Virus record (IMG/VR): IMGVR_UViG_3300009103_000001
Location: 62,001 to 126,000 of that record
Reading direction: 5' to 3' (one strand)
DNA length: 64,000 bases
Shown: positions 35,625 through 55,800 of the stretch, piece after piece
How positions within the stretch are numbered: the stretch's first letter is position 1
Layout of the letters: the number at the start of each line of letters is the position of its first letter
The notes under the pieces: generated by a model
Seen by the model: only the letters and a program-made list of their open reading frames with translations
What the model was told of the DNA's origin: nothing
Database searches by the model: none
Made by a program: the position numbers and the translations under genes

Positions 35625-35697
35625 TTATTTTTAATGTTCACATTAAATAAAGATAAGTTATTGTTATTAGTGTAGATATTTATATTAAAATATTTTT

Positions 35698-37575: not shown

Positions 37576-37624
37576 TTATTGAAGCACTTATCATTTTCGG
37601 CATATTTATTTTAAAAATAATATT

Positions 37625-38407
37625 ATGAATTTTGGTACTGTTAAGAATATATTTGTTGAAAAACTTATAGAATCCCATATTTCTGGTGAAAAAACAGGTA
37701 AAAACTTATATAAAAAGTTTTTAAAAACACTTAATGAAAGTGAAACATTAAAGACAGCTTTTGTTGTTTATAAGAATATTGAAAGTAATACAATTAGTGA
37801 TAAATTTGAGGCAAACCATTATTTAAAAGAAAATTTATCGTTAATTAATAATTTTACAGGAAAAAAATCATTAGTAGAAGAAACTAAAAAATTAATAGCA
37901 ATTTTAAAAGAAAATGATATTAATTTAGATGTTAAATCTAATAACTTACACGAATCTTTAGAAATACTTTTAACTAAAACTAGTAGTTTAAAAACCATAA
38001 ACAAATTACACGAATCTAGAATAAATGTTATAGATTGGTTAATTTCTAATAAAGATAGGGAAGAAAAAAGTGATTATGTTAGGGAAAATATAAATCCTAA
38101 GAAATTTTTAGATATAGCAACAAATAAATTTAATGAAAGATATTCAGAATTAACTGAAGAAGAAAAAAATATTTTAAAGGTACTTAAAGAATCTGACGAT
38201 AGTAGTTTAAAAAATATGGTTTTAAAACTAGTTAAAGATAACATTAACATTATAAATGAAAATTTGGATAAGTATTCAAATAATATGGATGTTAAAGGTA
38301 AGTTATTAGAAACTAAAGATAGGGTTTACAGAATGGTTGATAGTGATGATGATTTAGGTAATAAAATTTTAAAATTATATGATTTAAAAAATAGTATTAA
38401 TGGGTAA
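37625..38407 (+). CDS. Hypothetical head-module protein (helical, many LxE sites)
   Basis: CATATTTATT at 37601; directly after the portal. Confidence 0.8.
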   Translation: MNFGTVKNIFVEKLIESHISGEKTGKNLYKKFLKTLNESETLKTAFVVYKNIESNTISDKFEANHYLKENLSLINNFTGKKSLVEETKKLIAILKENDINLDVKSNNLHESLEILLTKTSSLKTINKLHESRINVIDWLISNKDREEKSDYVRENINPKKFLDIATNKFNERYSELTEEEKNILKVLKESDDSSLKNMVLKLVKDNINIINENLDKYSNNMDVKGKLLETKDRVYRMVDSDDDLGNKILKLYDLKNSING

Positions 38408-38915
38408 GATGTTTGGGTTTATTTTGGAGAATTTTGGGTTCAACTGTAAATATGAGTTTATGGGTTCAATGGTACACACACAAGTACTAGCTTTAACATT
38501 ACCTATAGCCGGCATTAGTTCAATAATTGAATCGTACTTTGGTTTACAGGGTTTAACAGTCCTATCTTTTGTGTTACTAATAACACTTGAACTTATATCG
38601 GGTATATGTGCGTCTAAGGTAAATAAAGAAAAAATCTCTTCTAGAAGGTTTAGTAGGTTTGGTTTTAAATTATTTGTATGGGTCACATTATTATTTATTT
38701 TAAATAGTTTAAGATTGGAATATTCCACATACGATACAACAATAGGTAAAACATCTTATTTATTATTTAATTGGTTACATAGTACAGTTTTTATTTATGT
38801 TAATTTAGAATATCTAATATCAGTTTTAGAAAATTTAGGGGTTATATCTGGTAAGAAAAAAGGTACATTAATTTCAGCAATTAAAAATAAACTAAAAAAC
38901 ATTCTTAAAAATTAA
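38400..38915 (+). CDS. Putative holin (phage holin 4-like)
   Basis: Multiple TM segments; ELISGICAS...ISSRRF...K...EYLISVLENLG. Confidence 0.7.
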   Translation: MGKMFGFILENFGFNCKYEFMGSMVHTQVLALTLPIAGISSIIESYFGLQGLTVLSFVLLITLELISGICASKVNKEKISSRRFSRFGFKLFVWVTLLFILNSLRLEYSTYDTTIGKTSYLLFNWLHSTVFIYVNLEYLISVLENLGVISGKKKGTLISAIKNKLKNILKN

Positions 38916-39329: not shown

Positions 39330-40460
39330 ATGAAAAAAGTTTTTTTAGAATACGTTTGGTTGGACGGAAATCAACCACAACAATTAAGAAGTAAAACTAA
39401 AGTTGTAAAACCTGAAGATATTAGAAAATATACTGATTCGGGGGTTATAAACCCCGAATATTCGGGATTTATTTGGGATTTACCTAAATGGTCTTTTGAT
39501 GGTAGTTCAACAAAACAGGCTAAAGCTGGAAAGGGGGAAAACACTGATTGTGTTTTAAAACCTGTATTTTCTTGTGATGACCCATTTAGAGGTGATTATC
39601 ATTACATTGTCCTTTGTGAGGTTTTAAATCCAGACGGAACCTTACACCCAACAAATAAAAGAGGTGAGTTAAGGGAGTTTATGGAAAAAAATAAAATAAC
39701 GGACTCTAAAGTTAGTTTAGAAAAAGCCAATTGGTTTGGTTGGGAACAAGAATATACTTTAACCACAAAACCGAATTTTAAAGAAGGTGAAGGATTACCA
39801 CTTGGGTTCAGACCTAATGAAGAACCTAGACCACAAGGAGATTATTATTGTGGTGTTGGAGCAGATAATATCACAGGTAGAAGAATTGTGGAAGAACATT
39901 TAGAAAAATGTGTTGAAGCTGGTTTGGATATCTCAGGTATTAACGCGGAAGTTATGTTAGGGCAATGGGAATACCAAATTGGACCTGTAACATCTCTTGA
40001 AGGGTCGGACCAATTATGGGTTTCTAGATATATTCTACAACGAGTGGCCGAAGAAAATGGTGTTAAAATATCATTTCACCCAAAACCAAAAACTGGTGAT
40101 TGGAATGGTTCAGGATGTCATGTCAATTTCTCAACCCCTGAAATGAGAAAAGAAGACGGTATTAAATTAATTAAAGATACAATGGCTAAATTAACACTTA
40201 CTCATGATGAACATATTAAAGTATATGGTTTATATAATGAAAAACGTATGACAGGTGAACATGAAACTTCTAGTATAAACGATTTTAGTTATGGTTATAG
40301 TACAAGAGATACTAGTATCAGAATTCCAGCACAGTCAATAATTGATGGTAAGGGTTATTTTGAAGACCGAAGACCCGCTTCTAATTGTGACCCATACAGT
40401 GTAGCATTACGTATGTTAAAAACTGTATATAACACTGTGAATGAAACAGTAGAAGTTTAA
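39330..40460 (+). CDS. glnII: Glutamine synthetase type II
   Basis: EYVWLDG, LRSKTK, WSFDGSST, EQEY, NAEVMLGQWEYQIGP, DWNGSGCH, SIRIP and YFEDRRPASNCDPY. Confidence 0.95.
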   Translation: MKKVFLEYVWLDGNQPQQLRSKTKVVKPEDIRKYTDSGVINPEYSGFIWDLPKWSFDGSSTKQAKAGKGENTDCVLKPVFSCDDPFRGDYHYIVLCEVLNPDGTLHPTNKRGELREFMEKNKITDSKVSLEKANWFGWEQEYTLTTKPNFKEGEGLPLGFRPNEEPRPQGDYYCGVGADNITGRRIVEEHLEKCVEAGLDISGINAEVMLGQWEYQIGPVTSLEGSDQLWVSRYILQRVAEENGVKISFHPKPKTGDWNGSGCHVNFSTPEMRKEDGIKLIKDTMAKLTLTHDEHIKVYGLYNEKRMTGEHETSSINDFSYGYSTRDTSIRIPAQSIIDGKGYFEDRRPASNCDPYSVALRMLKTVYNTVNETVEV

Positions 40461-41543: not shown

Positions 41544-42172
41544 TTTACTTGTGGATTTTTAAGTTGTACAGTTGGTTGAATTTCTTCTAATAGGAGTTCA
41601 TAAGAAACATCCATATCATTAGCTAATTTATAAAGTTGGTCGATGGTACCTTTTTTAATTGAATATTTAGCTATTGCTTCAATTAGGTTTTCTTTATCAT
41701 CAGCAGAAATATCTTCACAATTTTCAATTAAACCCGCGATTGTTTCTTGATTTCTTTCCAAAACATTGACGTTGAATTTATATTCGACCTCTTCATTTAC
41801 AATATCTTCACCGTAGGTTTTTATTAGATATTCAGCTCTTTCAGCATCTATCTTTTTATAAGAATCTTGTACAATAACCATCACTCTACCACCTTGGTCA
41901 GAAGTTAAGTTAAAAGATGATTCTCTTTTACCCGTTTTTTCTAATATAGCAATAAATTCTTCAACACCAATTTCTTTTATGGTTGATTCAGCTGAAGCTA
42001 ATTCTGACTTAATTGTTGCCATTTCCTTTTTTAATGTAGCTAGTTTAGCCAATTTTAAATGAAACAGAGCCATTTCTTCTTCTTTTAGTTTTGGTGTTAC
42101 CATCTGTTTTTCAACAGTTTTTGATTTAGTTGTTTTGGCTTTTGATTTAGCCTTTGAGAACATATTTGCCAT
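41540..42172 (-). CDS. Hypothetical early protein with coiled coil
   Basis: 210 aa; host-type promoter upstream. Confidence 0.8.
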   Translation of the reverse strand: MANMFSKAKSKAKTTKSKTVEKQMVTPKLKEEEMALFHLKLAKLATLKKEMATIKSELASAESTIKEIGVEEFIAILEKTGKRESSFNLTSDQGGRVMVIVQDSYKKIDAERAEYLIKTYGEDIVNEEVEYKFNVNVLERNQETIAGLIENCEDISADDKENLIEAIAKYSIKKGTIDQLYKLANDMDVSYELLLEEIQPTVQLKNPQVK

Positions 42173-42213
42173 AGTAATAAATGTTTTAAGTGATTTTTAA
42201 ATAATTAATTGAA

Positions 42214-42243
42214 CAAATATAATAATATTATTTTTATTGGCAA
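42214..42243 (-). promoter_or_regulatory. Bacteroidota-type promoter TTG-N19-TATATTTG
   Basis: Consensus match upstream of 42172. Confidence 0.6.
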
Positions 42244-42289
42244 TGGAATAAGTGAATTTATTGCATATTTATTAAGAAAAGTATTAAAT

Positions 42290-43018
42290 ATGAAAATATT
42301 AAAACCAGGAGATGAGGGATATGGTTATATCATTGAGTATGATGCCGGATTTATTTCACCATCATTAACATGTAAAGACGGTGTGTGTTCTAATTCTAAT
42401 TTGATTAAAGAATTTAAATCTGGTTTAAATTTCGGATTAGATGGGGAGTTACCAGATAAAATAGAATTATACGCTGTTCTTCAAAAATGGGGTGTGGAGA
42501 ATAAAAATGGTAGAGTATATACAGAAGAAATTTTAAAAAGAGAGGCAAAAAGATACCAAGAATTTATAGATATGGGTACATCACTCGGTGAATTGAATCA
42601 CCCAGAATCATCAATTATTGATGCTGACCGTGTATCACATAGAGTTACAGAAATATGGTGGGAAGGTAGAACATTAATGGGCAAAATCGAATTAGACACA
42701 ACACCAGGTTATTTAAGTGGTGGTGTGATTAGTTCTGTTGGTGATAAAGTTCTTAATATGATTAGAAAGGGATGGACTGTTGGCATATCTTCTAGAGGTG
42801 TCGGTTCGTTAAAACAAGAAGGTGGTAAAAATGTTGTTCAAGACGATTTCGAATTAATATGTTGGGATATTGTAACATCACCATCTACACCAGGTTCTTG
42901 GATATCGATAAGTCAACAAGATTTGACACCATATACAGAATCAGTTAAAAAAAATAATAATTTATTATCCGAAGAAGAACATACATTATTGAATAATTTA
43001 AATAAATTTTTATTATGA
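42290..43018 (+). CDS. Prohead core protein protease (T4 gp21-like)
   Basis: NKNGRVY, LGELNHP, VSH, GISSRGVGS and DIVTSPSTPGS; start moved to ATG 42290 after CATATTTATT at 42264. Confidence 0.92.
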   Translation: MKILKPGDEGYGYIIEYDAGFISPSLTCKDGVCSNSNLIKEFKSGLNFGLDGELPDKIELYAVLQKWGVENKNGRVYTEEILKREAKRYQEFIDMGTSLGELNHPESSIIDADRVSHRVTEIWWEGRTLMGKIELDTTPGYLSGGVISSVGDKVLNMIRKGWTVGISSRGVGSLKQEGGKNVVQDDFELICWDIVTSPSTPGSWISISQQDLTPYTESVKKNNNLLSEEEHTLLNNLNKFLL

Positions 43019-43296
43019 AAAAAATAATTAAATTAAACGAAAACGATATAGGGAACTTGGTTAAGAAAATAATCAAGGAAGATAGAACTGATTTTGAAAA
43101 AGTTTATATAATAGTTAATAGAGAAATACACGGTTATGAGGCGGTAGAGAATGTATATAAGACGTTGGAAGATGCGGTAAAAGATGATGTATTTGACAGA
43201 TACGAACAAACGCCAGAAATACTAAACGACCCAAATGATGGGGGGTTATATGGTATGAGTGAAACATTTTATATATTACCTTATAAAGTAAATTAA
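43015..43296 (+). CDS. Leader-A cargo protein (MKKIIKLNENDIGNLVKKIIKE)
   Basis: Leader shared with six other ORFs. Confidence 0.8.
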   Translation: MKKIIKLNENDIGNLVKKIIKEDRTDFEKVYIIVNREIHGYEAVENVYKTLEDAVKDDVFDRYEQTPEILNDPNDGGLYGMSETFYILPYKVN

Positions 43297-43313
43297 AAAT
43301 AATTTTTATTATA

Positions 43314-43634
43314 ATGAAAAGAATTGAAAAACAAAAGAGACGGTTAATTGAAGAAGCTAATAAAAGGGTTCTAAAGGAATCCGCTGAATTGACTGAATTA
43401 CACGATGATGTATTATACTTAACACCTGAATACCGTTTGACTGGTAATAGGGGTGAGGGTGTTCGTGTTTATGAAGAAATAATGGATACTGTTAATTCAT
43501 ATGGTATAGAACCATCTGATGAGGCTAAAGCTTTAATTAAAAGACTTGAATACGACCTTAGTGCTTTAGAGGGTTTCGATGAAAGAGTGGTAAAATTATA
43601 TGAATCTTTAAGTGGAATAAATATTAATGAATAA
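43314..43634 (+). CDS. Leader-C cargo protein (MKRIEKQKRRLIEEANKRVLKE)
   Basis: Leader related to those of 54431 and 54613. Confidence 0.8.
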   Translation: MKRIEKQKRRLIEEANKRVLKESAELTELHDDVLYLTPEYRLTGNRGEGVRVYEEIMDTVNSYGIEPSDEAKALIKRLEYDLSALEGFDERVVKLYESLSGININE

Positions 43635-43641
43635 AATAATT

Positions 43642-43980
43642 ATGAAAAAAATAATTAAATTAAACGAAAACGATATAGAAAATTTGGTTAAGAAAATAAT
43701 CAAGGAAGAGGGTGAAGAGTATAGAAGTAAAGACCCAGACCAATTGGATATGTTTGATGGCACAGTTAAAGATAGGGAATTAGAACAAGAATATAAAGAA
43801 TGGGAAGAAGAGGATGATAAAATGACAGATATATATAATGATATTTATGACACACTTGAACCGGTATTGAATAATATTCTTGATAAGTATGGAGAAGATT
43901 TTGATTTAATCGCCAATGATGACATGATTCAAAACATAGTAGAGGATTGGATGTATCCAGATGGAGGTGATGAAGATTAA
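43642..43980 (+). CDS. Leader-A acidic cargo protein
   Basis: Start moved to ATG 43642 at the leader. Confidence 0.8.
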   Translation: MKKIIKLNENDIENLVKKIIKEEGEEYRSKDPDQLDMFDGTVKDRELEQEYKEWEEEDDKMTDIYNDIYDTLEPVLNNILDKYGEDFDLIANDDMIQNIVEDWMYPDGGDED

Positions 43981-44010
43981 AAGGATAATAATATTTATAA
44001 TAAAATAATC

Positions 44011-45156
44011 ATGAAAAAAATAATTAAATTAAACGAAAACGATATAGAGAATTTAGTTAAAAAAATAATCAAGGAAGATAGGTTACAAGAATTAGATAAA
44101 TTAACTTATGATAGTGCAGCTGAAAAAGCTTCAGAAAGAGGTATACCCGCTTTATCTGATAGATTTAGAAAACATGGACAAGAACATGGTCTAGGAAAGG
44201 AAAAAGAACAATTCACTTTAGTGATTGACCATAGCAGTCTTGGAGAAAGGGAATATACTTATAAAGTTGAGTCTGTGGAGGAAATGGAAGATGGTAAAAC
44301 TTTAAAAATAAAATTAGTTGACATAGATAACCCACAAAATGTTCATACATATACAGGAAGTATTCGACTCACCAACCCAAACAAAAACAGTAGGTCACTT
44401 AAACGTGGGGATTATAAACTAATTTTATATTTTAGAGATAATTATTATACTTTAGCTAAAACAAGAAAAGATGCTAAAAATTTATTAAATATGTTAATTA
44501 AAAATATGGGTGGTAAACACATGTTCCACCCACTAAAAAATATAGACCCTAGAACTTTAACTCTTGGGTATTCAAATTTTGGTGAAAATATTAAAAGAAG
44601 AAAAACACTTAGTGAAGATAGAACTGATTATGAGATGAGTGGTGCTAGAAGTCGTAAAGACTATGTCTCTAATCCAAGAGAAAGAGATATTACTGGAATG
44701 TTCGGTAAATATTCTGAAGATGTACCACCAATGGTAATTAGATACATGAGAAAAAATCCTGAAGCTATTGTAAAAAGATTATATAAAATATATGGTGATA
44801 AAATATATGATTATATACCACAACAAGTAGATATGGATTTAGTTAGAAATAACCCGAATGATGCCGATTTAGGGGCACAAGTTAGAAGTCGTTTTAATTC
44901 TGAAAATATTAATGAATGTGGTGAAGGGGGTTATATGACAGAAGATGGTTGTGTTGATTATGTCGAGGAAAATAGAAGACCTAGAAGAATATCTGAATCA
45001 AACGGTAAAGGTTGTGCTGATACAGAAAAAGGTTGTATTAGAAAAAGAAAAAGTGGTTGGGTAATATTAAATAATAAAAAAGGTGGTGTTTGGAGAAAAT
45101 GTTCTAGTAGAAAAAACTGTGAAGAACAATTAGATGCATATCACGCAAATCAATAA
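44011..45156 (+). CDS. Leader-A multi-module protein
   Basis: ATATTTAT at 43991; internal LQE, LSE, INE and ISE sites separate modules. Confidence 0.85.
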   Translation: MKKIIKLNENDIENLVKKIIKEDRLQELDKLTYDSAAEKASERGIPALSDRFRKHGQEHGLGKEKEQFTLVIDHSSLGEREYTYKVESVEEMEDGKTLKIKLVDIDNPQNVHTYTGSIRLTNPNKNSRSLKRGDYKLILYFRDNYYTLAKTRKDAKNLLNMLIKNMGGKHMFHPLKNIDPRTLTLGYSNFGENIKRRKTLSEDRTDYEMSGARSRKDYVSNPRERDITGMFGKYSEDVPPMVIRYMRKNPEAIVKRLYKIYGDKIYDYIPQQVDMDLVRNNPNDADLGAQVRSRFNSENINECGEGGYMTEDGCVDYVEENRRPRRISESNGKGCADTEKGCIRKRKSGWVILNNKKGGVWRKCSSRKNCEEQLDAYHANQ

Positions 45157-45158
45157 TC

Positions 45159-45464
45159 ATGAAAGTTAAAAATATGTTATACGCGGGTCTTGGTATGGGT
45201 ACAATGGTATCTAAGAAGACTTATGAAGCTTATGAAAATTTTGTAAAAAGTGGTAAGGAGTTGGACCCAACAGTAAGTTCTACTATTGATGATTTTTTTA
45301 GTGATTTGGAAAATCAAAAAAAAGAAGTTAGAAATAGAGTTGAGGAAATTTTTAGTTTAACAGCGGATAAATTAGGGTACATCAAATTAAATGAGTATGA
45401 AAATTTATTAAAAAGAATAAAAACTTTAGAAGCTGAGTTAGCACAAGAAAAAAATAAAAAATGA
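45159..45464 (+). CDS. Phasin-like coiled-coil protein
   Basis: LYAGLGMG...FVKSGK...LLKRIKTLE resembles PhaF/PhaI-like phasin family proteins. Confidence 0.55.
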   Translation: MKVKNMLYAGLGMGTMVSKKTYEAYENFVKSGKELDPTVSSTIDDFFSDLENQKKEVRNRVEEIFSLTADKLGYIKLNEYENLLKRIKTLEAELAQEKNKK

Positions 45465-45805
45465 AAAAAAGAATTGTAAAACTAAACGAAAACGATATTG
45501 AAAGACTCGTTAATAGAATTATAAAAGAAGATGAAAAAGTATCATCTTCACAACTTAAACAAAAAATGAAACAAACTAGTATGGATACTGGTAGTTTAGG
45601 TTTAACACCAAAAGAAAGAGAAGTCTTTAGTACAGCAATAGATATGTTAAAAGATTTTTTCGCACAACAAGGAAATCAGGCAACAGGTAAAGCTTTAAGT
45701 TTATTTAATAGATTTAAGGATAGTTTAAAAGATGTTAAAGCTGAACCAATTAAATCACCAGAAGAGGAACAAAATACTGGTACAGATGAATTCGCGGACC
45801 AATAA
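45461..45805 (+). CDS. Leader-A cargo protein (MKKRIVKLNENDIERLVNRIIKE)
   Basis: Shared leader. Confidence 0.8.
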   Translation: MKKRIVKLNENDIERLVNRIIKEDEKVSSSQLKQKMKQTSMDTGSLGLTPKEREVFSTAIDMLKDFFAQQGNQATGKALSLFNRFKDSLKDVKAEPIKSPEEEQNTGTDEFADQ

Positions 45806-46296
45806 TGGGATTAATTCGTAAAATAATAAAAGAAGAACTTCTTAAGGAAGTTGGGGGATATGATGACCCAACTATAATGGCTCAACATTCTGGTGCAACA
45901 TTACGTTCACTAATAGAAGTATTGTCTGGTATGTTAGAGGCTATTAAAAGATTAGCTCAAAAAATATCAAAAGGCGGGTTAGATAAATTTAAAGGTAGAG
46001 ACGTATTATTTAATTTATCTGACATAATAAATGAAGGATTAAGATTAACAGGTTTATTAATAAAAGATTTCACAGAAGATGATATTATATTTGAAGGTAA
46101 AAAGTTTATTGAAAAAATGAATGAGTTTAAAAGAAAGATTAGACTTTTATCTAATCTTGGTTCAAGTTATACAGAAAAAGACTATAATGAGAAAATATTA
46201 GAATTGATATTTAAATTGGAACCGACAATAAACAGTTATGGTAATAGTTTAAATGATGTTAATAAAAGATTCATGGATAGGTTCGATATGATATAA
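45805..46296 (+). CDS. Leader-B cargo protein (MGLIRKIIKEELLKE), helical
   Basis: Leader nearly the same as that of the sigma factor at 22511. Confidence 0.8.
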   Translation: MGLIRKIIKEELLKEVGGYDDPTIMAQHSGATLRSLIEVLSGMLEAIKRLAQKISKGGLDKFKGRDVLFNLSDIINEGLRLTGLLIKDFTEDDIIFEGKKFIEKMNEFKRKIRLLSNLGSSYTEKDYNEKILELIFKLEPTINSYGNSLNDVNKRFMDRFDMI

Positions 46297-46376
46297 TAAT
46301 TTTAATTAACTATTCACAAATAAACATATATTAAATAAAATTGTATTAATAATTAATCAAAAAAAAGTTTTAAAAA

Positions 46377-46610
46377 ATGAGTGATATAATAGTAAAATAT
46401 TTTTTAGTAAAAGTAGAATTTGATTCTATAAATGAGAACACGGGAAAACCAAAGAAAATAAAAACACAATATCTTGTTGATGCAATGACTTGTACAGAAG
46501 CTGAAGCAAGAACAAACATTTATTTAAAAGAATCTGTGTTAGACTATGAGATTGTATCGGCAGTTAAAAGTCCAATAGAAGACGTTATAAGAGTAGCGGT
46601 TCCGGCTTAG
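46377..46610 (+). CDS. DUF4494-like protein
   Basis: YLVDAMTCTEAEAR motif, a family typical of Bacteroidota. Confidence 0.7.
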   Translation: MSDIIVKYFLVKVEFDSINENTGKPKKIKTQYLVDAMTCTEAEARTNIYLKESVLDYEIVSAVKSPIEDVIRVAVPA

Positions 46611-46634
46611 ATAAAAAAACAAAAATACTACTTT

Positions 46635-46670
46635 AACACGAAATGTCTAATTGATGTTTCGTGTTTTTTT
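46635..46670 (+). terminator. Intrinsic terminator
   Basis: aacacgaaatgtc/gatgtttcgtgtt stem plus T-tract. Confidence 0.75.
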
Positions 46671-46823
46671 ATGCTTAAAAATTTTATTCTATAAAAAAAA
46701 TATAATTAAAATAAACTAAAATAAAGTTTTTTTAACTTTTTCCACATTTAATACATATTTATTAGAAAACTCTAAGTGCTTTAGGGTTTTTTAATAATAT
46801 TATATAATAAAAAATAAAAAAAA

Positions 46824-48029
46824 ATGGCAGAGAACAGAAAGTCTATCATCGATGAGGCTCTCTTAGAAAGCGAACAAATTGAAAAAGCTTTCGAAGCTAA
46901 TGCAAAAGAAATACTGACTCAAACTATGAGTTCAGAAATTGAAGAAATGGTAAAGGAATCTTTAGAAGGTTCAAGTAGCTTAACAGAAGACGAAGATGAA
47001 GAAATGTTAGATTTACCTGATATGGGTGATGATGACGAAGATGCCGTCGCTGTTGCTGGTGACGTAGAAGACCTAGAAGACATGGGAATGGAACTAGGCG
47101 ACCTTGAAGGTCTAGAAGACCTTGAAGGGGATGATAACGAAGGACTTGATATCGAAATGATTGATTTGACAGACGCTGACGACACTGAAGTTGTTAGAGT
47201 TTTCAAAAAAATGGGACCAGACGATGAAATCGAAGTGGTTCAAGATGGTGGAAATATTGATATTAAGGATAATGAAACTGGCGCAGAATATAGAGTAGAA
47301 CTTGGTGGTGAAGGTGAAGACCTTGAAGACCTTGAAGGTGATGAAATTGAAATGGAAGACTTAGAAGACGTAGACGTTGAAGGTGATGAAATTGAAATGG
47401 AAGACCTAGAAGGTGATGACACTGAAGGTGAAGAAATTATTTATCAAGTAGAACTTGATGATGAAGATGACACCGTTGAAGAAGCTAGCAGAACATTAGG
47501 TAAGGGAAGTAAAAACTACCCTAAACGTAAAGGTTTACCAAAACCTATAGCTAGTGGAGCTAAGAATGAGTCAATAAAACCAAAGTTCTTAAAAATGATG
47601 AATGAAAATAAAGTTCTAAAAACTGATATCGAAAAAGTTGAATCTGAAAATAAAGAGTTAAAAGAAGACTATAATAAAATGGTTGACGCTCTTAAACAGT
47701 TCAGACAAAAACTTAATGAGGTTGCTGTGTTTAACAGTAACTTAACTTATACAGTTAGATTATTTACCGAACACTCAACTACTAAAGATGAGAAAGTTGA
47801 TGTAATCAAGAGATTTGATGAAGCTAAAACTCTTAAAGAATCTAAAGCTACTTATAAAAATTTAGTTAAAGAAATATCTAAGACAAAGGCTCCAATTAAA
47901 GAATCTATTGAGGAAAAAATTAACGAAACAAAATCTAGTGGTTCAGCACAGGTAACTGAATCTAAAGTTTATGTACACCCAGAGTTAGAAAAAATGAAAA
48001 ACTTATGGGAATATGAGTACAAAAACTAA
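46824..48029 (+). CDS. Prohead scaffolding/core protein (T4 gp22 position)
   Basis: Acidic low-complexity middle, C-terminal coiled coil, many LxE sites; immediately upstream of the major capsid gene. Confidence 0.8.
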   Translation: MAENRKSIIDEALLESEQIEKAFEANAKEILTQTMSSEIEEMVKESLEGSSSLTEDEDEEMLDLPDMGDDDEDAVAVAGDVEDLEDMGMELGDLEGLEDLEGDDNEGLDIEMIDLTDADDTEVVRVFKKMGPDDEIEVVQDGGNIDIKDNETGAEYRVELGGEGEDLEDLEGDEIEMEDLEDVDVEGDEIEMEDLEGDDTEGEEIIYQVELDDEDDTVEEASRTLGKGSKNYPKRKGLPKPIASGAKNESIKPKFLKMMNENKVLKTDIEKVESENKELKEDYNKMVDALKQFRQKLNEVAVFNSNLTYTVRLFTEHSTTKDEKVDVIKRFDEAKTLKESKATYKNLVKEISKTKAPIKESIEEKINETKSSGSAQVTESKVYVHPELEKMKNLWEYEYKN

Positions 48030-48064: not shown

Positions 48065-49888
48065 ATGGGATATTTATTAAAATCTGGTGAGGTTGGAAAT
48101 ATCGGACTTAAGCATCAAAAAGCTATCCGTGAAGCAACCGTAAACAAGTGGAATGACCTAGGATTTCTTGAAGGTTTAGATGGGCATGTTAAAGAAAACA
48201 TCGCTCTTCTTTACGAGAACCAAGCGTCAACACTTATTAATGAGACAACAGATACGGCTGGTGGAGCATCAACTGGTTCTTTTGAAACAGTAGTTTTTCC
48301 AATCGTAAGGCGTGTTTTCTCAAAATTGTTAGCAAACGACATCGTTTCTGTTCAAGCATTAAATTTACCAATAGGTAAACTTTTCTATTTCGTACCAAAA
48401 GTATCGGATAGAGTTGAGAGTACATCTCCATCTTTTGCTGGTGGAGCATCTGGTGCTACTGCATCACATGGAGCACCAATAATCTGTCACTGTAACACAA
48501 CAGACTGTAATCCTACGACTTACTCTGAATGTGCTAAAAATATGTATGATAGATTTTATGATGACGGAATGTGGGACCAATCAAAAGGTCAAATAATGTT
48601 ACACGTTGATAACGGTACTATGGTAGTGTTTACTGCTTGTACTGACGCAACACTTGGTGTTCCTCATGAATTCATTGGTGGTGTTACTGCACAAGCTGGT
48701 GACGGTTCTGTTAGAAGTCAAATTGTACAAATTTGTAACTTTAGTACAGCTGGAGCTGGTAGACTTTTAGGTCCTGATGGAAATGAAATGGATACTGAAT
48801 CTTTCTTAGCATCAATTGCTGTTACACCTACTGGTACTTTAGTTGATAAAGATGGTTTAACAATTGCTGAGGCTGGTGACCAATTACCAGTTAGAGTTGT
48901 TACACAAAAATATGGTAGAGGTATCGTTTCTTATGGTGATATTTGTGACGCTGAAGGATGTATATTCTTAGAAGTTGATTTAACTCACCCAGTATGTGTA
49001 GAATGTGGTGATGGTACTTTCGATGGTTATATCGGAGCAGCATCTGGAACAACAGCTATTGTATCTGGTGTAGGTTCTAGTGACTTAGGAGGTGTAAACC
49101 TAGCAGTTACTTGGAGGTCTTACCAAGACCTTGAAGAAGAGTGTGAAATGGGAGAAGTATCTTTCGAACTTGATTCTGTTACAGTATCGGTTACTGAAAG
49201 AAAATTAAGAGCTACTTGGACTCCTGAATTAGCACAAGATGTGTCAGCGTTCCATAACATTGATGCAGAAGCTGAATTAACAGCATTACTTTCTGAACAA
49301 GTTGCAGCAGAAATCGACAGGGAAATCCTTAGAGATTTAAGAACTGGGGCGGCTTGGACATTAAGATGGGATTATAACGGATGGAAAAGGTTACCAAATA
49401 ACAACGGTTACACTCAAAAAGATTGGAACCAAACGTTGATTACAGCGGTTAACCAAATTTCAGCTCAAATCCATAAGTCTACTCTTAGGGGTGGTGCTAA
49501 CTTCGTAGTTGTATCTTCTGAGGTATCAGCCATTATGGATGACCTTGAATACTTCCACGTATCTAACGCAGCTCCAGAACAAGACCAATACAATATGGGT
49601 ATTGAAAGAGCTGGTTCTCTTGGTGGACGTTACACTGTATACCGTGACCCTTACGCTCCAGCACACTCGGTGTTAGTTGGACACAAAGGTAAATCACTAT
49701 TGGATACTGGGTATATTTACGCTCCGTATGTACCATTACAGTTAACTCCAACAATGTACAATCCATTTAACTTTGTACCTATCAAAGGTATAATGACGCG
49801 TTACGCGAAAAAGATGGTTAATAACAGGTTCTACGGACATATCCGTGTGGACGGTTTACGTACATTTGATGTTAGAGAATTGAGATAA
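48065..49888 (+). CDS. Major capsid protein (T4 gp23-like) with Cys-rich insertion
   Basis: PIVRRVF..LLANDIVSVQ, RKLRATWTPELAQD, EIDREI, YAPYVPLQ and GIMTRY. Confidence 0.95.
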   Translation: MGYLLKSGEVGNIGLKHQKAIREATVNKWNDLGFLEGLDGHVKENIALLYENQASTLINETTDTAGGASTGSFETVVFPIVRRVFSKLLANDIVSVQALNLPIGKLFYFVPKVSDRVESTSPSFAGGASGATASHGAPIICHCNTTDCNPTTYSECAKNMYDRFYDDGMWDQSKGQIMLHVDNGTMVVFTACTDATLGVPHEFIGGVTAQAGDGSVRSQIVQICNFSTAGAGRLLGPDGNEMDTESFLASIAVTPTGTLVDKDGLTIAEAGDQLPVRVVTQKYGRGIVSYGDICDAEGCIFLEVDLTHPVCVECGDGTFDGYIGAASGTTAIVSGVGSSDLGGVNLAVTWRSYQDLEEECEMGEVSFELDSVTVSVTERKLRATWTPELAQDVSAFHNIDAEAELTALLSEQVAAEIDREILRDLRTGAAWTLRWDYNGWKRLPNNNGYTQKDWNQTLITAVNQISAQIHKSTLRGGANFVVVSSEVSAIMDDLEYFHVSNAAPEQDQYNMGIERAGSLGGRYTVYRDPYAPAHSVLVGHKGKSLLDTGYIYAPYVPLQLTPTMYNPFNFVPIKGIMTRYAKKMVNNRFYGHIRVDGLRTFDVRELR

Positions 49889-50140: not shown

Positions 50141-50368
50141 TTTTATAAAAATAAAATACGTGAAACAGTTTTTTTTATTTTTTTCTTGATACGTATTCTT
50201 CTTATACGTGAAACTCTATTTTCAATTTCGAATAACTTACTTATGTTATCGTTAATTTCTATTATTTCTTTTCTTTTTTTCATAATGCATTAAGTATTAA
50301 ATATCAAATAATTCTCAAAAGTATCAAAAATTTAATAATAAAACAAGATATTTATAAAAAAGATTTTA

Positions 50369-50803
50369 ATGAAAATTAAAAAAATCATAAAAACTATTTT
50401 GGAATCAGAATTTGACTGGGTTAAAGATTCTGTTTTACATTTTTGGGATATGAATAAAAAATATGTTGTGGATGTTTCAAAGTTAGAAAGATACCCACCA
50501 ATGAGTCTTTCACCAACTTCTGATAGGTATACAGATATATTTATATCAGATATTATAGATTATGGTAAAGAAATAGGGTATGATATAACGGATTTAGGTA
50601 GTACAGCTGATATACAACAACGAGTGCAAGGTTCTTATACCGTTCCTCATGATGTATGTTATATATATTTTAATCCAAACAAATTTGTAGAGTGGGATAT
50701 GTGTGGTATAGACGACCCAACTTGGGATGGTGAATATGAGTTAATGGATGCGGAGAGTTTTATTTATTATATGGAGAATAATTTTATTAAGAATGAACAT
50801 TAA
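50369..50803 (+). CDS. Leader-B cargo protein (MKIKKIIKTILESEFDW)
   Basis: GATATTTATA at 50347. Confidence 0.8.
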   Translation: MKIKKIIKTILESEFDWVKDSVLHFWDMNKKYVVDVSKLERYPPMSLSPTSDRYTDIFISDIIDYGKEIGYDITDLGSTADIQQRVQGSYTVPHDVCYIYFNPNKFVEWDMCGIDDPTWDGEYELMDAESFIYYMENNFIKNEH

Positions 50804-51842
50804 AAAAATTATAAGAGAAGAGTTGGACGATTTTGATTGGGCTAGGGATGATATCTACTTTTCAATAGACTATATTCTAGGTAAACAGATGTATTTTAGG
50901 CATAGTAATATAAATGAACTTGAAAGAGAATATAAAGCTTATAACAATGACAGAATACAACAAATACCAAAAAATAAAATAGTCTTAGGTAATATTAAGT
51001 GGACTAGTATGTTTACGGCAAATTATGTTAAAAATAATATAGCACACATCTATTTACAAGACAGCACTAGTTTACAATATTCAGTGGATATGGTTGAATT
51101 TTATGTAAATAGTGGTATATGGGCTTTAGAGGATGATAATGGTAATATTATTAATGATTTCTCTGGCCAATATTTAAAAGAATCAGAGTTGGATTGGATT
51201 CAAAAATCTGAACCAGATAGAAAAGATATTAGAAGTTTCAATAAAGAAAGGTATAAAACCACTCTTAATTATAATAATGCTGAAATAGGGGATAAATTTA
51301 TCCCACCTGGTAGTCATATGGTATGGACCGTTGATGATAAAGAATTTTGGCGTGGCAAATGGGGTAATGACGAAAATGGAGACCCTGAATATTATAGATA
51401 TTTTATTATATGGATAAAAAATGAGAGGGGTGACCTCAAAAGAAAGTATTATAATAAAACGAATAAATTATTTCCAGGTACTTATAGACCTTGGAGAAAA
51501 ATAGTTGACTCTAATATTAATGAATCGAAAGAGTTTGATTGGGCAAAAGAAATTAAACCTGAAATGACTGCTGAAGCTGTACCACTATATTATAATAAAC
51601 CTCTTTTTTGGTATCATCGGGGTGAACCTAGGCAATGTTGGGGGATGCCTACCATTTATTGGTTATCAAAAAGTTATGTCACTGAAAGGGGTGAAAATAT
51701 ATCTTTATTATGTTATGATGACGGATGTGATGTAGAATCAAAAATTGAATGTAGTGCATTTTATGACTATACAATTGCTAATATGTTTAATGAGGGGACA
51801 CTTAGATTTCAATCACAGTTAAGTGATATTGAACCAACTTAA
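50793..51842 (+). CDS. Putative three-module polyprotein (MNIKKIIREELDDFDW; LKESELDW; INESKEFDW)
   Basis: Start moved to ATG 50793; internal linkers at 51174 and 51516. Confidence 0.8.
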   Translation: MNIKKIIREELDDFDWARDDIYFSIDYILGKQMYFRHSNINELEREYKAYNNDRIQQIPKNKIVLGNIKWTSMFTANYVKNNIAHIYLQDSTSLQYSVDMVEFYVNSGIWALEDDNGNIINDFSGQYLKESELDWIQKSEPDRKDIRSFNKERYKTTLNYNNAEIGDKFIPPGSHMVWTVDDKEFWRGKWGNDENGDPEYYRYFIIWIKNERGDLKRKYYNKTNKLFPGTYRPWRKIVDSNINESKEFDWAKEIKPEMTAEAVPLYYNKPLFWYHRGEPRQCWGMPTIYWLSKSYVTERGENISLLCYDDGCDVESKIECSAFYDYTIANMFNEGTLRFQSQLSDIEPT

Positions 51843-53222: not shown

Positions 53223-53359
53223 CTATTTTATATTTTTTTTCGATTTTTCTCTAATTATTTTCCATATTGCTTAAGACAATATGGTTAATTACTTTATTCT
53301 TCAAATATAGACCAATTTTTTTAATTTAACAAGATATTTATTAAAAAAGATAATTTAAC

Positions 53360-53764
53360 ATGAAAAAGAAAGTAATTAAATTAAACGAAAACGATATAGA
53401 AAATTTGGTTAAGAAAATAATCAAAGAAGAAGATAAGGAAAAAGTGACAACTTTAACCAGACATCCAGCTTATCCAATTATAGATGAATTGGAAATGACT
53501 TTGGATGAGTTAAAAACAAAATTTAAAAGAGATATCGCAAATAGTGTTTCTGGAGCAGATGGATATCATAGTGAGATAGATACATTCGTGTCAAATTTTA
53601 ATAAATTTATTGGGAAAGTTTCTGATTTGAAAAGTAAGATAAATGACCATCAAATAGCGTCAAAAAAGAAACAAGAGTCAAACGCTCAAATGCAAGAAAG
53701 AAAAAGAGCTCATTGGGATAGAAAAGAAAAAGCTAGAAATGAGGGTAGTAAATACTCATATTAA
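53360..53764 (+). CDS. Leader-A cargo protein
   Basis: MKKKVIKLNENDIENLVKKIIKEE; GATATTTATT at 53333. Confidence 0.85.
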   Translation: MKKKVIKLNENDIENLVKKIIKEEDKEKVTTLTRHPAYPIIDELEMTLDELKTKFKRDIANSVSGADGYHSEIDTFVSNFNKFIGKVSDLKSKINDHQIASKKKQESNAQMQERKRAHWDRKEKARNEGSKYSY

Positions 53765-53777
53765 AGACGTTAAATCT

Positions 53778-54113
53778 GTGAAAAAGAAAATAATCAAATT
53801 AAACGAAAGTGATATTCAACGTATTGTTAAAAGAATAATAAGTGAAAATAGTGGAATGGATTTTTACTTAGAAGAACTTGGGGAGTTTGCCAATAACTTA
53901 GAATGGAATGATATATATGATGATGATGAGGACCTTAGAGATTATGATGTACATCAAGTAGAGGAAATAATACAACAAGCCAATGATGACGAATCCCTAA
54001 GTGATAATGAGTGGGATATCATTAGTGAATTTGGGCAAGCTATAATTAATAAGTTAACTGGCGAAAGTGGTGAAGAGGATTATCCGACAGACCAGAGAGA
54101 GTATTGGTCATAA
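53778..54113 (+). CDS. Leader-A acidic cargo protein
   Basis: GTG start at 53778: KKKIIKLNESDIQRIVKRIISE. Confidence 0.75.
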   Translation: MKKKIIKLNESDIQRIVKRIISENSGMDFYLEELGEFANNLEWNDIYDDDEDLRDYDVHQVEEIIQQANDDESLSDNEWDIISEFGQAIINKLTGESGEEDYPTDQREYWS

Positions 54114-54134: not shown

Positions 54135-54431
54135 ATGAAAAAGAAAATAATCAAATTAAACGAAAAGGATATCGAAAGATTGGTAGAAAAAATCATTAAA
54201 GAAGAAAATGATATGTTAATGGGTGAAGACTCAGAAGGTGAAGAAACCTATAATTATGACCAAGATTTACATCATGATTCTGAAGAATTACATGATTTAG
54301 AACATAAACATGGTAGTAAAAGACATATCCGTAATTTAAAAAAGGATATGGATTATGATGAAAAAAGAGGTGTAGGTAAAAATGATAAGTGGAGAAGAGA
54401 AAGAGGTACCCACTTTAATAGAAGAAGTTAG
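54135..54431 (+). CDS. Leader-A cargo protein, His/charge-rich
   Basis: MKKKIIKLNEKDIERLVEKIIKEE. Confidence 0.8.
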   Translation: MKKKIIKLNEKDIERLVEKIIKEENDMLMGEDSEGEETYNYDQDLHHDSEELHDLEHKHGSKRHIRNLKKDMDYDEKRGVGKNDKWRRERGTHFNRRS

Positions 54432-54616
54432 TGAATAGACAAGATAAAATACAAAACATACTTAAAGCCAATAAAAGGTTATTAAAAGAAGACCATGAAA
54501 GTACCGATAAAGGTAAGATTGATTATATAAAAGGTGCTTTAGAAAATTTATCATCTGAGGATTTGGATAAGATTTATTTGTCAGTTGAAGAGTATGACCC
54601 AGAATATGAAAAATGA
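54431..54616 (+). CDS. Leader-C small cargo protein
   Basis: MNRQDKIQNILKANKRLLKE. Confidence 0.75.
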   Translation: MNRQDKIQNILKANKRLLKEDHESTDKGKIDYIKGALENLSSEDLDKIYLSVEEYDPEYEK

Positions 54617-55800
54617 GAAGGTTTGATAAAAATAAAAATATATTAGAAGCCAACTTAAGATTAGAAAGAGAATTTATTACCAGTAAATCTCTTTTATTAA
54701 GCACTACAACAAGTAATACATTTATTGAATCTTGTTTAAATAGCCAATATTTTAACGAAGATGAAAAATCTTTTATACTAGAAACAGTATTACCAAATCA
54801 AAAATTAATACAAGAAGGTGGTTGGGATTGGATTAAAGATAATATAATAGAACCCACAAAAAATGCCATAAAAAAAGGTGTAGATAAAGCAAAATCTTTT
54901 TACACTAAAATAAAAGAACTTATTTCTAATATTGGTAAATTTTTAAAAGAAATATGGTCATATATTATAAAGTTTGGTGAATGGTTGTGGGATAAGGTTT
55001 TTGGTATAGTTAAAAATAAAATTAATAAAAATAAAGCTAAGATTGAAAAAAAGTTAGAGGAATTTAAAAATTTACCACCACAAGAAAGAGACACAGAAAT
55101 AGAACAGTTAATCCAAACTGGAGAATTTTGGAAGGATAAGTCTGGTATTAGCACTATTTTAGGTACTTTTAATAGTGATGTTGAGGGCTCAATAAATAAA
55201 ATGAATTCTGGTAGTGAAGCTATAATGGAATATTGGTCACCTGAAGTTATAGACTTTTTTGGTAAAAGTAAAAAAATTCTAAAAGAAGGTAGTAGTAAAG
55301 CAATGAAAGTAGTGGAGTGGGTTGTTCAGGCTGTTAGTTGGGTTATAAAAATACCTCAAAAAGCTTTAGAATGGATTTTTAGTAAAGCGGCCCAAGGTAT
55401 ATTAATACTTTCTAGTATTGCAACTGAAAAGTTTGGTGGTCCTGGTCCATTCAAATTCCCAAATTTAAGTCATCTTATTGGAGCAACTTTACTTACTATA
55501 GCTGAGTCAATAGTTTTTTCACACACAGTTTTTCATACACATTTTAAAGGTAATTTTATTACAGATGTGATTGTAGGTTGGGAACATATCATGGAAGAGG
55601 TTTTAGGAAAAATCGCTGGTAGTTTTGTTAAACCACTTGTTGCAATCATATCGGGTATTGGTATTGTTTTAGGTATAATGGAGATGATTTTTGCTATTCA
55701 ACACATAAGAAAAGAAAAAGACTTATCACAATACGATAAAAAAGATTTAAATCAAGATGGTAAGGGTGATAGTTTCGATGAAAAATTAGCTACTAGTTAA
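54613..55800 (+). CDS. Leader-C protein with amphipathic and hydrophobic C-terminal helices
   Basis: MRRFDKNKNILEANLRLE; internal LIQEGGWDW and ILKE; TM-like segments. Confidence 0.8.
   Translation: MRRFDKNKNILEANLRLEREFITSKSLLLSTTTSNTFIESCLNSQYFNEDEKSFILETVLPNQKLIQEGGWDWIKDNIIEPTKNAIKKGVDKAKSFYTKIKELISNIGKFLKEIWSYIIKFGEWLWDKVFGIVKNKINKNKAKIEKKLEEFKNLPPQERDTEIEQLIQTGEFWKDKSGISTILGTFNSDVEGSINKMNSGSEAIMEYWSPEVIDFFGKSKKILKEGSSKAMKVVEWVVQAVSWVIKIPQKALEWIFSKAAQGILILSSIATEKFGGPGPFKFPNLSHLIGATLLTIAESIVFSHTVFHTHFKGNFITDVIVGWEHIMEEVLGKIAGSFVKPLVAIISGIGIVLGIMEMIFAIQHIRKEKDLSQYDKKDLNQDGKGDSFDEKLATS

What the first reader, a model, noticed from the sequence alone, without database searches (positions are those of the whole stretch)
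43015..44080. Leader-coding DNA is a near-identical ~68-bp cassette, suggesting recombinational cargo swapping
Seen: copies at 43015, 43642, 44011 and 53360 differ by only a few bases, including at synonymous positions, and identity collapses just after the ...AAGGAAGA (KE-D/E) junction. The upstream ATAAAATAAT is also shared by 43642 and 44011. Inference: recent duplication or gene conversion of the leader lets new ORFs be recruited into the virion, and the repeats provide homology for array expansion and contraction.
Basis: partly seen in the sequence, partly recalled or inferred. Interest (0 to 1): 0.75.

Follow-up and report, generated by a model that had tools for sequence, protein, structure and literature searches.

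The report
Shared capsid-targeting-like leader on swappable phage genes
An uncultured marine T4-like phage puts the same 22-residue N-terminal tag, which looks like a capsid-delivery signal cut off by the head protease, on at least seven unrelated small genes. The DNA for the tag is kept nearly identical in four of them by recombination, and the tag marks the points where relatives gain, lose and exchange these genes.

Summary
The leader MKK(I/V)IKLNENDIENLVKKIIKE occurs seven times, not four. All copies are on the + strand, in two clusters either side of the scaffold and capsid genes.

- **DNA identity.** Four copies (43015, 43642, 44011, 53360) are 92-98% identical and share rare codons: 100 of 114 codon matches against 70.9 expected, with none of 20,000 simulations reaching 100. 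The other three are saturated at synonymous sites. Downstream DNA is unrelated.
- **Setting.** The phage is a distant T4 relative with a gp21-family protease, gp20 portal and gp23 capsid protein. The leader ends in I-x-E, the T4 gp21 cleavage motif.
- **Relatives.** In 40 related contigs the protease-to-scaffold interval varies from 1.3 to 4.4 kb. The same cargo families carry different leader types, and leaders are gained, lost or internalised.
- **Strain level.** A close relative lacks about 0.9 kb starting exactly at a leader end.
- **Spread.** A leader profile finds 4,930 protein clusters in public data.
- **Precedent.** T4 ipII and ipIII show the same pattern, with 30 of 30 identical leader bases.

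This is most likely a capsid-targeting propeptide like that of the T4 internal proteins. The recombination and cargo swapping are well supported. Packaging into the head and cleavage are inferred, not shown.

The parts
42209..43018 (+). Prohead maturation protease of the T4 gp21 family. An ATG at 42290 is the start used by public gene calls.
   Evidence: Pfam Peptidase_S77, E 5.4e-25; PHROG 207 head maturation protease, E 1.4e-41. A [LIV]-x-E site about 17 residues from the C-terminus is conserved in most relatives.
43015..43296 (+). Leader gene 1 (93 aa). Leader DNA 43015-43080; acidic cargo, pI 4.3.
   Evidence: Orthologues in L116, L117 and P0163 give dN/dS of about 0.13, so this is a real gene.
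43314..43634 (+). Gene with the second leader type (type B, ending ..EANKRVLKE; 106 aa).
   Evidence: The same cargo family (c38) carries the type-A leader in L004, L010, L117 and P0106.
43642..43980 (+). Leader gene 2 (112 aa). Leader DNA 43642-43707; very acidic mosaic cargo.
   Evidence: Its C-terminal domain occurs behind a variant type-A leader or a type-B leader in P0002 and P0010. Its linker occurs with a different domain in P0014 and P0016.
44011..45156 (+). Leader gene 3 (381 aa). Leader DNA 44011-44076, then an extra N-terminal domain, then the conserved c14 domain with a Cys-rich tail.
   Evidence: P0073 (in L116) has the leader joined directly to the c14 domain, with 91% identity over 184 aa. 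L117 has no N-terminal leader but a complete internal one.
43710..44613 (+). Segment of about 0.9 kb that is present here but absent from close relative L116 and from a variant in cold-seep metagenome X7. Its left edge is the end of the 43642 leader.
   Evidence: The blastn block with L116 ends at 43709 and resumes at 44601. A Logan contig joins 43077 to 44614 with a 16-nt overlap, and X7 has zero depth at 44170-44366 and 0.7 at 44367-44563. The 16-mer lies at 43078-43093 and 44614-44629.
45461..45805 (+). Leader gene 4 (114 aa). Leader DNA 45461-45529; a diverged copy.
   Evidence: The orthologue in L116 has a roughly 50-nt patch that replaces the type-A core with a type-B core.
45805..46296 (+). 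Conserved core gene c0 (163 aa) with a short leader, MGLIRKIIKEELLKE, before VGGYDDP.
   Evidence: Present in 33 of the 41 loci compared (40 relatives plus the window). Orthologues in L015 and L023 carry the full type-A leader joined at the same point.
46377..46610 (+). Conserved DUF4494 gene with no leader.
   Evidence: Pfam PF14902, E 1.2e-11. Present in 38 loci.
46824..48029 (+). Acidic scaffold (prohead core) protein, the presumed docking partner of the leader.
   Evidence: Position between protease and capsid gene; 119 acidic residues; 13 [LIM]-x-E sites. Collinear in 35 loci.
48065..49888 (+). Major capsid protein, gp23 family.
   Evidence: Pfam Gp23, E 4.6e-71. The N-terminal region has conserved I-R-E and I-N-E sites about 24 residues before the VRRVF block.
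53360..53764 (+). Leader gene 5 (134 aa; family c15, basic, pI 9.1). Leader DNA 53360-53428.
   Evidence: Orthologues in 14 related loci. The leader differs at 1 of 51 bases from the 43642 copy but is synonymously saturated against its orthologues. The AF2 model gives a leader helix at 10-24, a disordered linker, then a helical hairpin.
53778..54113 (+). Leader gene 6 (111 aa, GTG start). Leader DNA 53778-53846, ending ISE; acidic cargo.
54135..54431 (+). Leader gene 7 (98 aa). Leader DNA 54135-54203; a diverged copy.
54431..55800 (+). Two further type-B leader genes: 54431-54616 (61 aa) and 54613-55800 (395 aa, with hydrophobic C-terminal segments).
50793..51842 (+). Gene with the short third leader type (MNIKKIIREE, then DDFDW).
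   Evidence: This is one of 15 such ORFs in the 210-kb record.

Best explanation
The 22-23-residue leader is an N-terminal capsid-targeting propeptide, the functional counterpart of the T4 internal-protein CTS.

**Proposed mechanism (inferred).**
- The leader is an amphipathic helix that docks newly made cargo proteins onto the acidic scaffold core while the prohead assembles.
- The gp21-family protease encoded immediately upstream then cuts after the invariant Glu of the terminal (I/L/M)-x-E, and probably also after the invariant L-x-E at residues 7-9.
- This frees small, mostly acidic proteins of unknown function inside the head. They would then be retained, degraded or ejected with the DNA.

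**DNA level (shown).**
- The leader-coding DNA is a short portable homology.
- Four copies in this genome have been homogenised by recent gene conversion.
- In the phage population, exchanges that begin or end at the leader move, replace, fuse and delete cargo genes and swap leader types.
For: **Shown**
- Seven N-terminal copies on unrelated cargos flank the scaffold and capsid genes.
- The protease, portal and capsid protein are T4-type.
- In 56 distinct leaders, E9 is invariant and L7, D11, E13, L15, V16, I19 and E22 are at least 90% conserved. Position 21 (the x) varies freely. This matches the L/I-x-E specificity of gp21 (PMC9026906).
- The same motif is conserved in the capsid protein's N-terminal region and near the protease C-terminus in most relatives.
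- The leader is amphipathic: hydrophobic moment 0.54 against 0.23 in shuffles, P=0.009. AF2 predicts a helix followed by a disordered linker.
- Cargo families switch leader type at the predicted cleavage point, for example ..IITE|VGGYDDP against ..LLKE|VGGYDDP.
- Paralogous leaders are near-identical while orthologous leaders are synonymously saturated.
- The interval varies in length and content among 40 relatives.
- Breakpoints against L116 and L117 lie at leaders. A metagenomic contig shows the shorter form.
- 4,930 protein clusters match the leader profile. In 142 of the best 150 the match starts within the first 5 residues.
- One such protein lies between the S77 protease and the scaffold of another phage.
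- T4 ipII and ipIII have 30 of 30 identical CTS bases, then 19 of 60.

**Inferred**
- Binding to the scaffold, cleavage, packaging and ejection.
Against: - There are no virion proteomics, no cultured relative carrying this leader and no cleavage data.
- The leader has no sequence similarity to the T4 CTS and is twice as long.
- Most cargos are acidic, whereas T4 internal proteins are described as basic (PMC9026906).
- No recombinase was found in the 64%-complete record.
- The right-hand ends of some rearrangements lie in microhomology of 5-16 nt rather than in a leader. Not every event is therefore plain homologous exchange between leaders.
- The metagenomic junction comes from assembled contigs, not reads.
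Confidence: 0.68

Rival explanations
1. The leader is a shared N-terminal interaction or oligomerisation helix of a family of scaffold-like prohead core proteins, comparable to T4 gp67, gp68 and gp22. These proteins would help build the core and be degraded. They would not be delivered as cargo, and the leader would not be a sufficient targeting signal.
For: - The cargos are small, acidic and helical, like scaffold fragments.
- The genes sit between the protease and the scaffold, and c0 and c15 are conserved.
- Several [LIM]-x-E sites lie inside the cargos.
Against: - About 4,930 unrelated cargo clusters, with rapid turnover among close strains, are hard to reconcile with essential core building blocks.
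- Some cargos are 300-400 aa, basic or Cys-rich.
Confidence: 0.17
2. The near-identity of the four copies reflects selection on the nucleotide sequence itself, such as an mRNA structure, a translation-initiation region or a protein-binding DNA site, rather than recombination.
For: - The element sits at the 5' end of each mRNA.
- A small hairpin (TTGGTTAA...TAATCAAG) is predicted in three of the four copies.
- The orthologous 43015 leader in L116 has dS 0, against 0.26 in its cargo.
Against: - Predicted folds are weak, with z-scores of -0.1 to -1.9. The hairpin is absent from 44011 and from the diverged copies.
- There is no Rfam match.
- Three copies in the same genome, and orthologues in relatives, keep the peptide while their synonymous sites are saturated. 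Function therefore does not require this DNA sequence.
Confidence: 0.05
3. The leader targets the proteins somewhere other than the prohead, or marks them for regulated degradation. Possible destinations are the membrane, another phage assembly or a compartment.
For: - Fifteen further genes with the short related leader lie far from the head module.
- One type-B cargo has hydrophobic segments.
Against: - The leader has no signal-peptide or transmembrane character.
- Every long-leader gene in the 210-kb record flanks the scaffold and capsid genes, and the long-leader genes found in the related head-module loci and in L123 lie in the same module on the same strand.
- The invariant terminal Glu fits the neighbouring protease.
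Confidence: 0.08
4. The repeat array is an artefact of metagenome assembly, through chimeric joins or collapsed consensus at shared k-mers.
For: - The genome is a metagenomic assembly.
- Logan contigs of the source run break at each leader, and depth rises there.
Against: - A second assembly is collinear and 99.9% identical over 16.7 kb.
- Contigs from other samples (L116, L117) reproduce most of the gene order.
- Exact repeats are at most about 57 nt.
- The copies differ from one another at fixed positions.
Confidence: 0.02

Closest known systems
Capsid targeting sequence (CTS) of the T4 internal proteins IPI, IPII, IPIII and Alt
   Same: - It is an N-terminal propeptide on otherwise unrelated small proteins.
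- It ends in the L/I-x-E site of the gp21 prohead protease, and the phage here encodes a gp21-family protease, a gp20 portal and a gp23 capsid protein.
- Internal proteins are highly variable between related phages, with only the CTS conserved (PMC3012670, PMC9026906).
- T4 ipII and ipIII also share an identical leader DNA block: 30 of 30 bases plus about 16 upstream, then unrelated sequence.
   Different: - The leader here is 22-23 residues against 10, with no sequence similarity.
- The genes sit inside the head module, between protease and scaffold and after the capsid gene, rather than in early or accessory regions.
- The cargos are mostly acidic.
- At least three interchangeable leader types exist.
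- The scale differs: 7 or more genes per genome and about 4,900 cargo clusters, against more than 30 known T-even IP variants (PMC2839356).
- Packaging and cleavage are untested here.
[quoted passage not shown]
   Same: Short repeated sequences flank small variable ORFs and act as recombination points. They account for insertions, deletions and replacements between close relatives (PMC2839356, PMC4122927).
   Different: PeSLs are non-coding promoter and terminator units located between genes. Here the repeat is coding and forms part of each gene product, so an exchange automatically gives the incoming ORF the tag.
Propeptides of head and ejection proteins in giant phages (phiKZ, 201phi2-1, SPN3US), removed by gp21-like proteases
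   Same: Many head-internal proteins are processed after a Glu within a short motif by a diverged gp21 homologue (PMC9026906, PMC5694885).
   Different: In those phages the propeptides are not a single shared, near-identical leader, and the protease motif differs according to PMC9026906. No DNA-level cassette is described in the passages read.

Membership tests
T4-type capsid targeting sequence (CTS) / internal proteins | A short propeptide at the extreme N-terminus of otherwise unrelated proteins | tested here: met
   Seven genes in the window carry it. In 142 of the 150 best database matches the match starts within residues 1-5. It is 22-23 aa long, against 10 in T4.
T4-type capsid targeting sequence (CTS) / internal proteins | The propeptide ends in the gp21 cleavage motif L/I-x-E | tested here: met
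   The terminal E is at least 90% conserved, and P3 is I, L or M in the leaders inspected (I in most). A second L-x-E has an invariant E9. The motif definition is taken from PMC9026906.
T4-type capsid targeting sequence (CTS) / internal proteins | The phage encodes a gp21-family prohead protease and a T4-type scaffold and capsid | tested here: met
   Peptidase_S77, E 5.4e-25; Portal_T4, E 4.8e-74; Gp23, E 4.6e-71.
T4-type capsid targeting sequence (CTS) / internal proteins | Sequence homology to the T4 CTS (MKTYQEFIAE) | tested here: not met
   Comparison by eye with the T4 ipII and ipIII leaders read shows no resemblance beyond the terminal x-E. Any relationship is functional analogy, not demonstrable homology.
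T4-type capsid targeting sequence (CTS) / internal proteins | The leader is necessary and sufficient for incorporation into the prohead core | not testable with these tools
   This needs fusion and packaging experiments in a cultured host-phage pair. No cultured phage with the leader was found.
T4-type capsid targeting sequence (CTS) / internal proteins | The leader is removed in mature virions and the cargo is ejected with the DNA | not testable with these tools
   This needs virion mass spectrometry or N-terminal sequencing.
Recombination-mediated modular shuffling at short repeats (PeSL-like) | Insertions, deletions and replacements between close relatives have end-points in the repeat | tested here: met
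   The collinear block with L116 ends at 43709, the last base of the leader cassette. A roughly 50-nt A-to-B patch is bounded by the leader ends. L117 has lost the N-terminal leader and kept an internal one. Some right-hand ends lie in 5-16-nt microhomology instead.
Recombination-mediated modular shuffling at short repeats (PeSL-like) | Physical recombination products, such as mini-circles or junction reads, are present in a population | tested here: inconclusive
   One Logan contig in X7 carries the short junction. X7 has zero depth at 44170-44366 and 0.7 at 44367-44563. These are contigs rather than reads, and they may represent a separate strain rather than an ongoing event.

The most novel reading that the evidence does not exclude
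The long leader, the type-B leader and the short MNI..IIKEE leader are interchangeable versions of one delivery tag used across a large, abundant clade of marine T4-like and jumbo phages. On this reading a single phage packages some 25 different proteins, and the population carries thousands. That would be a plug-in system in which any ORF recombined behind the tag is injected into the host ahead of gene expression, forming a very large hidden reservoir of first-strike anti-defence or takeover proteins.
Probability: 0.25. Interest if true: 0.85.

Novelty: new variant of a known kind. Interest (0 to 1): 0.6.

Why it matters
If the leader is a capsid-delivery tag, a 30-position profile becomes a way to list the proteins that uncultured marine phages probably carry inside their heads. 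It already picks out about 4,900 unrelated protein clusters. None of the 60 scanned had a Pfam match stronger than E 1.7e-4.

In T4, proteins delivered this way include inhibitors of host defences: IPI acts against GmrSD, and IPIII is needed on strain ECOR17 (PMC3012670, PMC9391042). This set is therefore a plausible place to look for new counter-defence functions.

The case also shows clearly how a coding repeat can act as a recombination handle. The repeat gives each newly acquired gene its address label, and events between near-identical strains can be reconstructed to the base.

Tried and rejected
- **Cultured relatives.** blastn of 42000-46400 against GenBank phages found nothing. tblastn with the 53360 protein found only chance hits. 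The nearest cultured phages (Flavobacterium phage immuto, Microcystis phage Mel-JY01) share about 40% capsid identity, and immuto has no such leader genes.\n- **Cargo function.** Pfam and PHROGs gave nothing beyond DUF4494 and one PHROG of unknown function. Pfam on 60 database cargos gave three weak single hits. ESM Atlas searches for the c14 domain and c0 gave only unnamed viral clusters and generic helical bundles.\n- **RNA explanation.** The folds are weak and there is no Rfam hit.\n- **Degenerate leader DNA pattern in viral contigs.** Only 6 of the 29 hits carried a recognisable leader. The protease-anchored loci were more useful.\n- **Other joints reported by read laying.** 43026 to 46804 has only 21 nt on its shorter side, 43324 to 46291 has 28 nt, and 43709 back to 43648 has unknown content between its two sides. 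I treated all three as repeat or low-complexity artefacts. The 43077 to 44614 joint is best read as the L116-type gene (leader joined directly to DRTDY) aligned to the first leader, not as a 1.5-kb deletion.\n- **Recombinase.** A Pfam RecA search of the record found nothing, but the record is only 64% complete.\n- **Repoila et al. 1994.** The paper (PMC395341) is not held and could not be read.
Full report
**What the window is.** It is bases 62,001-126,000 of a single 210,157-bp contig with 30% GC, assembled from a marine metagenome and judged 64% complete.
- The region holds a T4-type head module on the + strand. In order: large terminase, gp20-type portal (35698-37575), a gp21-family prohead protease (42209-43018; Peptidase_S77, E 5e-25), an acidic scaffold protein (46824-48029) and a gp23-type capsid protein (48065-49888).
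- The nearest cultured phages share only about 40% capsid identity.

**Checking the observation.**
- Over the 51-nt core they are 92-98% identical. Identity ends after ..AAGGAAGA, and the next 150 nt are 27-34% identical, the random level for this composition.
- A 22-nt core pattern matches six times against none in shuffles.
- I used the genome's own codon usage as a null model. The four copies agree at 100 of 114 codon comparisons against 70.9 expected, and none of 20,000 simulations reached 100. They share the rare codons AAC, TTG, AAG and ATC.
- A six-frame scan of the whole contig finds three more copies, at 45461, 53778 (GTG start) and 54135. These keep the peptide but are at the chance level for codon identity: 26 of 42 against 24.3 expected.
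- There are therefore seven leader genes in two clusters: four between protease and scaffold, and three after the capsid gene.
- The shared upstream ATAAAATAAT is not unusual in this AT-rich DNA, with 5 matches against 3.7 expected.
- A second assembly reproduces the array at 99.9% identity.

**The leader as a peptide.** I aligned 56 distinct leaders from this window and from 40 related viral contigs whose proteases are 61-84% identical.
- The consensus is MKKVIKLNExDIExLVKKIIKE. E9 is invariant, and L7, D11, E13, L15, V16, I19 and E22 are at least 90% conserved. The residue before E22 varies freely.
- The leader therefore contains L-x-E at residues 7-9 and ends in (I/L/M)-x-E. This is the specificity reported for T4 gp21, which cuts after Glu in L/I-x-E (PMC9026906).
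- Comparable conserved sites occur in the capsid protein's N-terminal region and, in most relatives, about 17 residues from the protease C-terminus.
- The leader is significantly amphipathic as a helix. In an AlphaFold model of the 53360 protein it forms a helix (10-24), followed by a disordered linker and a helical hairpin.
- RNA-level explanations are weak.

**Other leader types.**
- *Type B.* Three genes (43314, 54431, 54613) begin with a second leader ending ..ANKR(V/L)LKE, again an L-x-E.
- *Short type.* Fifteen ORFs across the contig begin with a leader of about 10 residues, M(N/D)(I/L)(K/R)(K/R)II(K/R)EE, which resembles the last third of the long leader.
- *The types are interchangeable on the same cargo.*
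  - Family c38 has type B here and type A in L004, L010 and L117.
  - Family c15 has type A here and a B-like leader in L005.
  - The conserved VGGYDDP protein has the short leader in most genomes, but the full long leader in L015 and L023, joined at exactly the same residue.
  - The C-terminal domain of the 43642 cargo is found behind variant type-A or type-B leaders in metagenome proteins.
  - Cargos beginning DFDW occur with either the long or the short leader.

**Concerted evolution.** The 53360 gene has orthologues in 14 related loci.
- Against those orthologues its leader is saturated at synonymous sites, as is its cargo. Within this genome it differs at 1 of 51 bases from the 43642 leader, 10 kb away.
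- This is the signature of recent intragenomic or intrapopulation gene conversion, not of a constraint on the DNA sequence.
- Some relatives show milder versions. Both leaders of L028, for example, share RLKE, which no other leader found in these loci has.

**Turnover among relatives.** Portal, protease, scaffold and capsid genes are collinear in the 40 contigs. The protease-to-scaffold interval, however, ranges from 1.27 to 4.4 kb and carries 0-3 leader genes.
- Five of the genes in the window's two clusters have no counterpart in any of the 40 contigs.

**Comparisons with the two closest contigs.**
- *L116 (about 88% identical).*
  - It is collinear up to 43709, the last base of the 43642 leader cassette, and resumes at about 44601. 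It therefore lacks about 0.9 kb.
  - There the leader is fused directly to the c14 domain: P0073 is 91% identical to residues 197-380 of the 44011 protein.
  - A contig with this junction also occurs in a cold-seep metagenome, which has zero or near-zero depth over 44170-44563. The 16-mer shared by both sides lies at 43078-43093 and 44614-44629.
  - In the orthologue of 45461, a roughly 50-nt patch replaces the type-A core with type B. The patch is bounded by the conserved leader ends.
- *L117 (about 79% identical).* The counterpart of 44011 has lost its N-terminal leader but carries a complete leader internally. The window's gene has a 43-residue gap at that position.

**Scale.** A profile of the 30-column leader alignment finds 4,930 cluster representatives (50% identity clusters) at E of 0.001 or better among 1.84 billion.
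- In 142 of the best 150 the match starts within the first five residues, and the downstream sequences are very diverse.
- A few show tandem or partial leader duplications.
- One sampled hit lies between an S77 protease and the scaffold of another phage.
- Sixty of the cargos scanned have essentially no Pfam domains.

**Comparison with what is known.** T4 internal proteins are diverse proteins that share only a capsid targeting sequence. That sequence directs them into the scaffolding core and is removed by gp21 (PMC3012670, PMC9026906).
- The IP loci are highly polymorphic and are flanked by repeats thought to drive shuffling (PMC2839356).
- In T4 itself, ipII and ipIII share 30 of 30 identical CTS bases plus about 16 upstream. 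After that identity drops to 19 of 60.
- The present case works like that system, but it is not demonstrably homologous to it. It differs in leader length and sequence, in genomic location, in having several interchangeable leader types, and in scale.

**Verdict.** The recombination and cargo-swapping inference is well supported. The virion-targeting function is the best explanation but remains untested.

Noticed in passing
window 313-861, 45805-46296, 50793-51842; genome C1 10880-62861: Fifteen ORFs start with a short leader, M(N/D)(I/L)(K/R)(K/R)II(K/R)EE, often followed by DDFDW. Their downstream sequences are mostly unrelated. Most lie outside the head module. Relatives carry the same type immediately after the capsid gene.
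   Followed up: partly
window 43314-43379, 54431-54490, 54613-54672: A second leader type (..EANKRVLKE, ..KANKRLLKE, ..EANLRLERE) also ends in L-x-E. A more distant relative (L043, 14830 and 15216, - strand) has two tandem genes with a related 30-residue leader. L048 and L060 have pairs of genes starting M..LIKKLLRE.
   Followed up: partly
window 54613-55800: This 395-aa type-B leader protein has several hydrophobic segments in its C-terminal half. It could be a membrane-active internal or ejection protein.
   Followed up: no
window 39330-40460: A glutamine-synthetase-like gene (Gln-synt_N and Gln-synt_C) sits inside the head module between portal and protease. It is conserved there in 27 of the related contigs.
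   Followed up: no
window 38400-38915: Precomputed Pfam hits in public gene calls mark this gene as holin family PF05105. It lies between the portal and the protease, an unusual position for a lysis gene.
   Followed up: no
window 35650-35697, 37590-37624, 43985-44010, 50335-50368, 53320-53359: The motif ATATTTAT(A/T) recurs 15-25 nt upstream of several + strand head-module genes. It may be this phage's late-promoter element. The T4 late-promoter sequence TATAAATA is absent from 35-56 kb.
   Followed up: no
window 47040-47440: The scaffold gene contains 15- and 30-nt periodic repeats that encode acidic (D/E)-L-E-G and I-E-M-E-D units. Each unit carries L/I-x-E motifs.
   Followed up: no
window 44590-44613: The stretch ..NFGENIKRRKT.. 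in the 44011 protein marks the spot where L117 has a complete internal leader. It looks like the scar of a fusion between two leader genes.
   Followed up: yes
whole record (G000): CheckV completeness is 64% for 210 kb, so the phage probably has a jumbo-sized genome. No RecA/UvsX-type Pfam match occurs in the part held.
   Followed up: no
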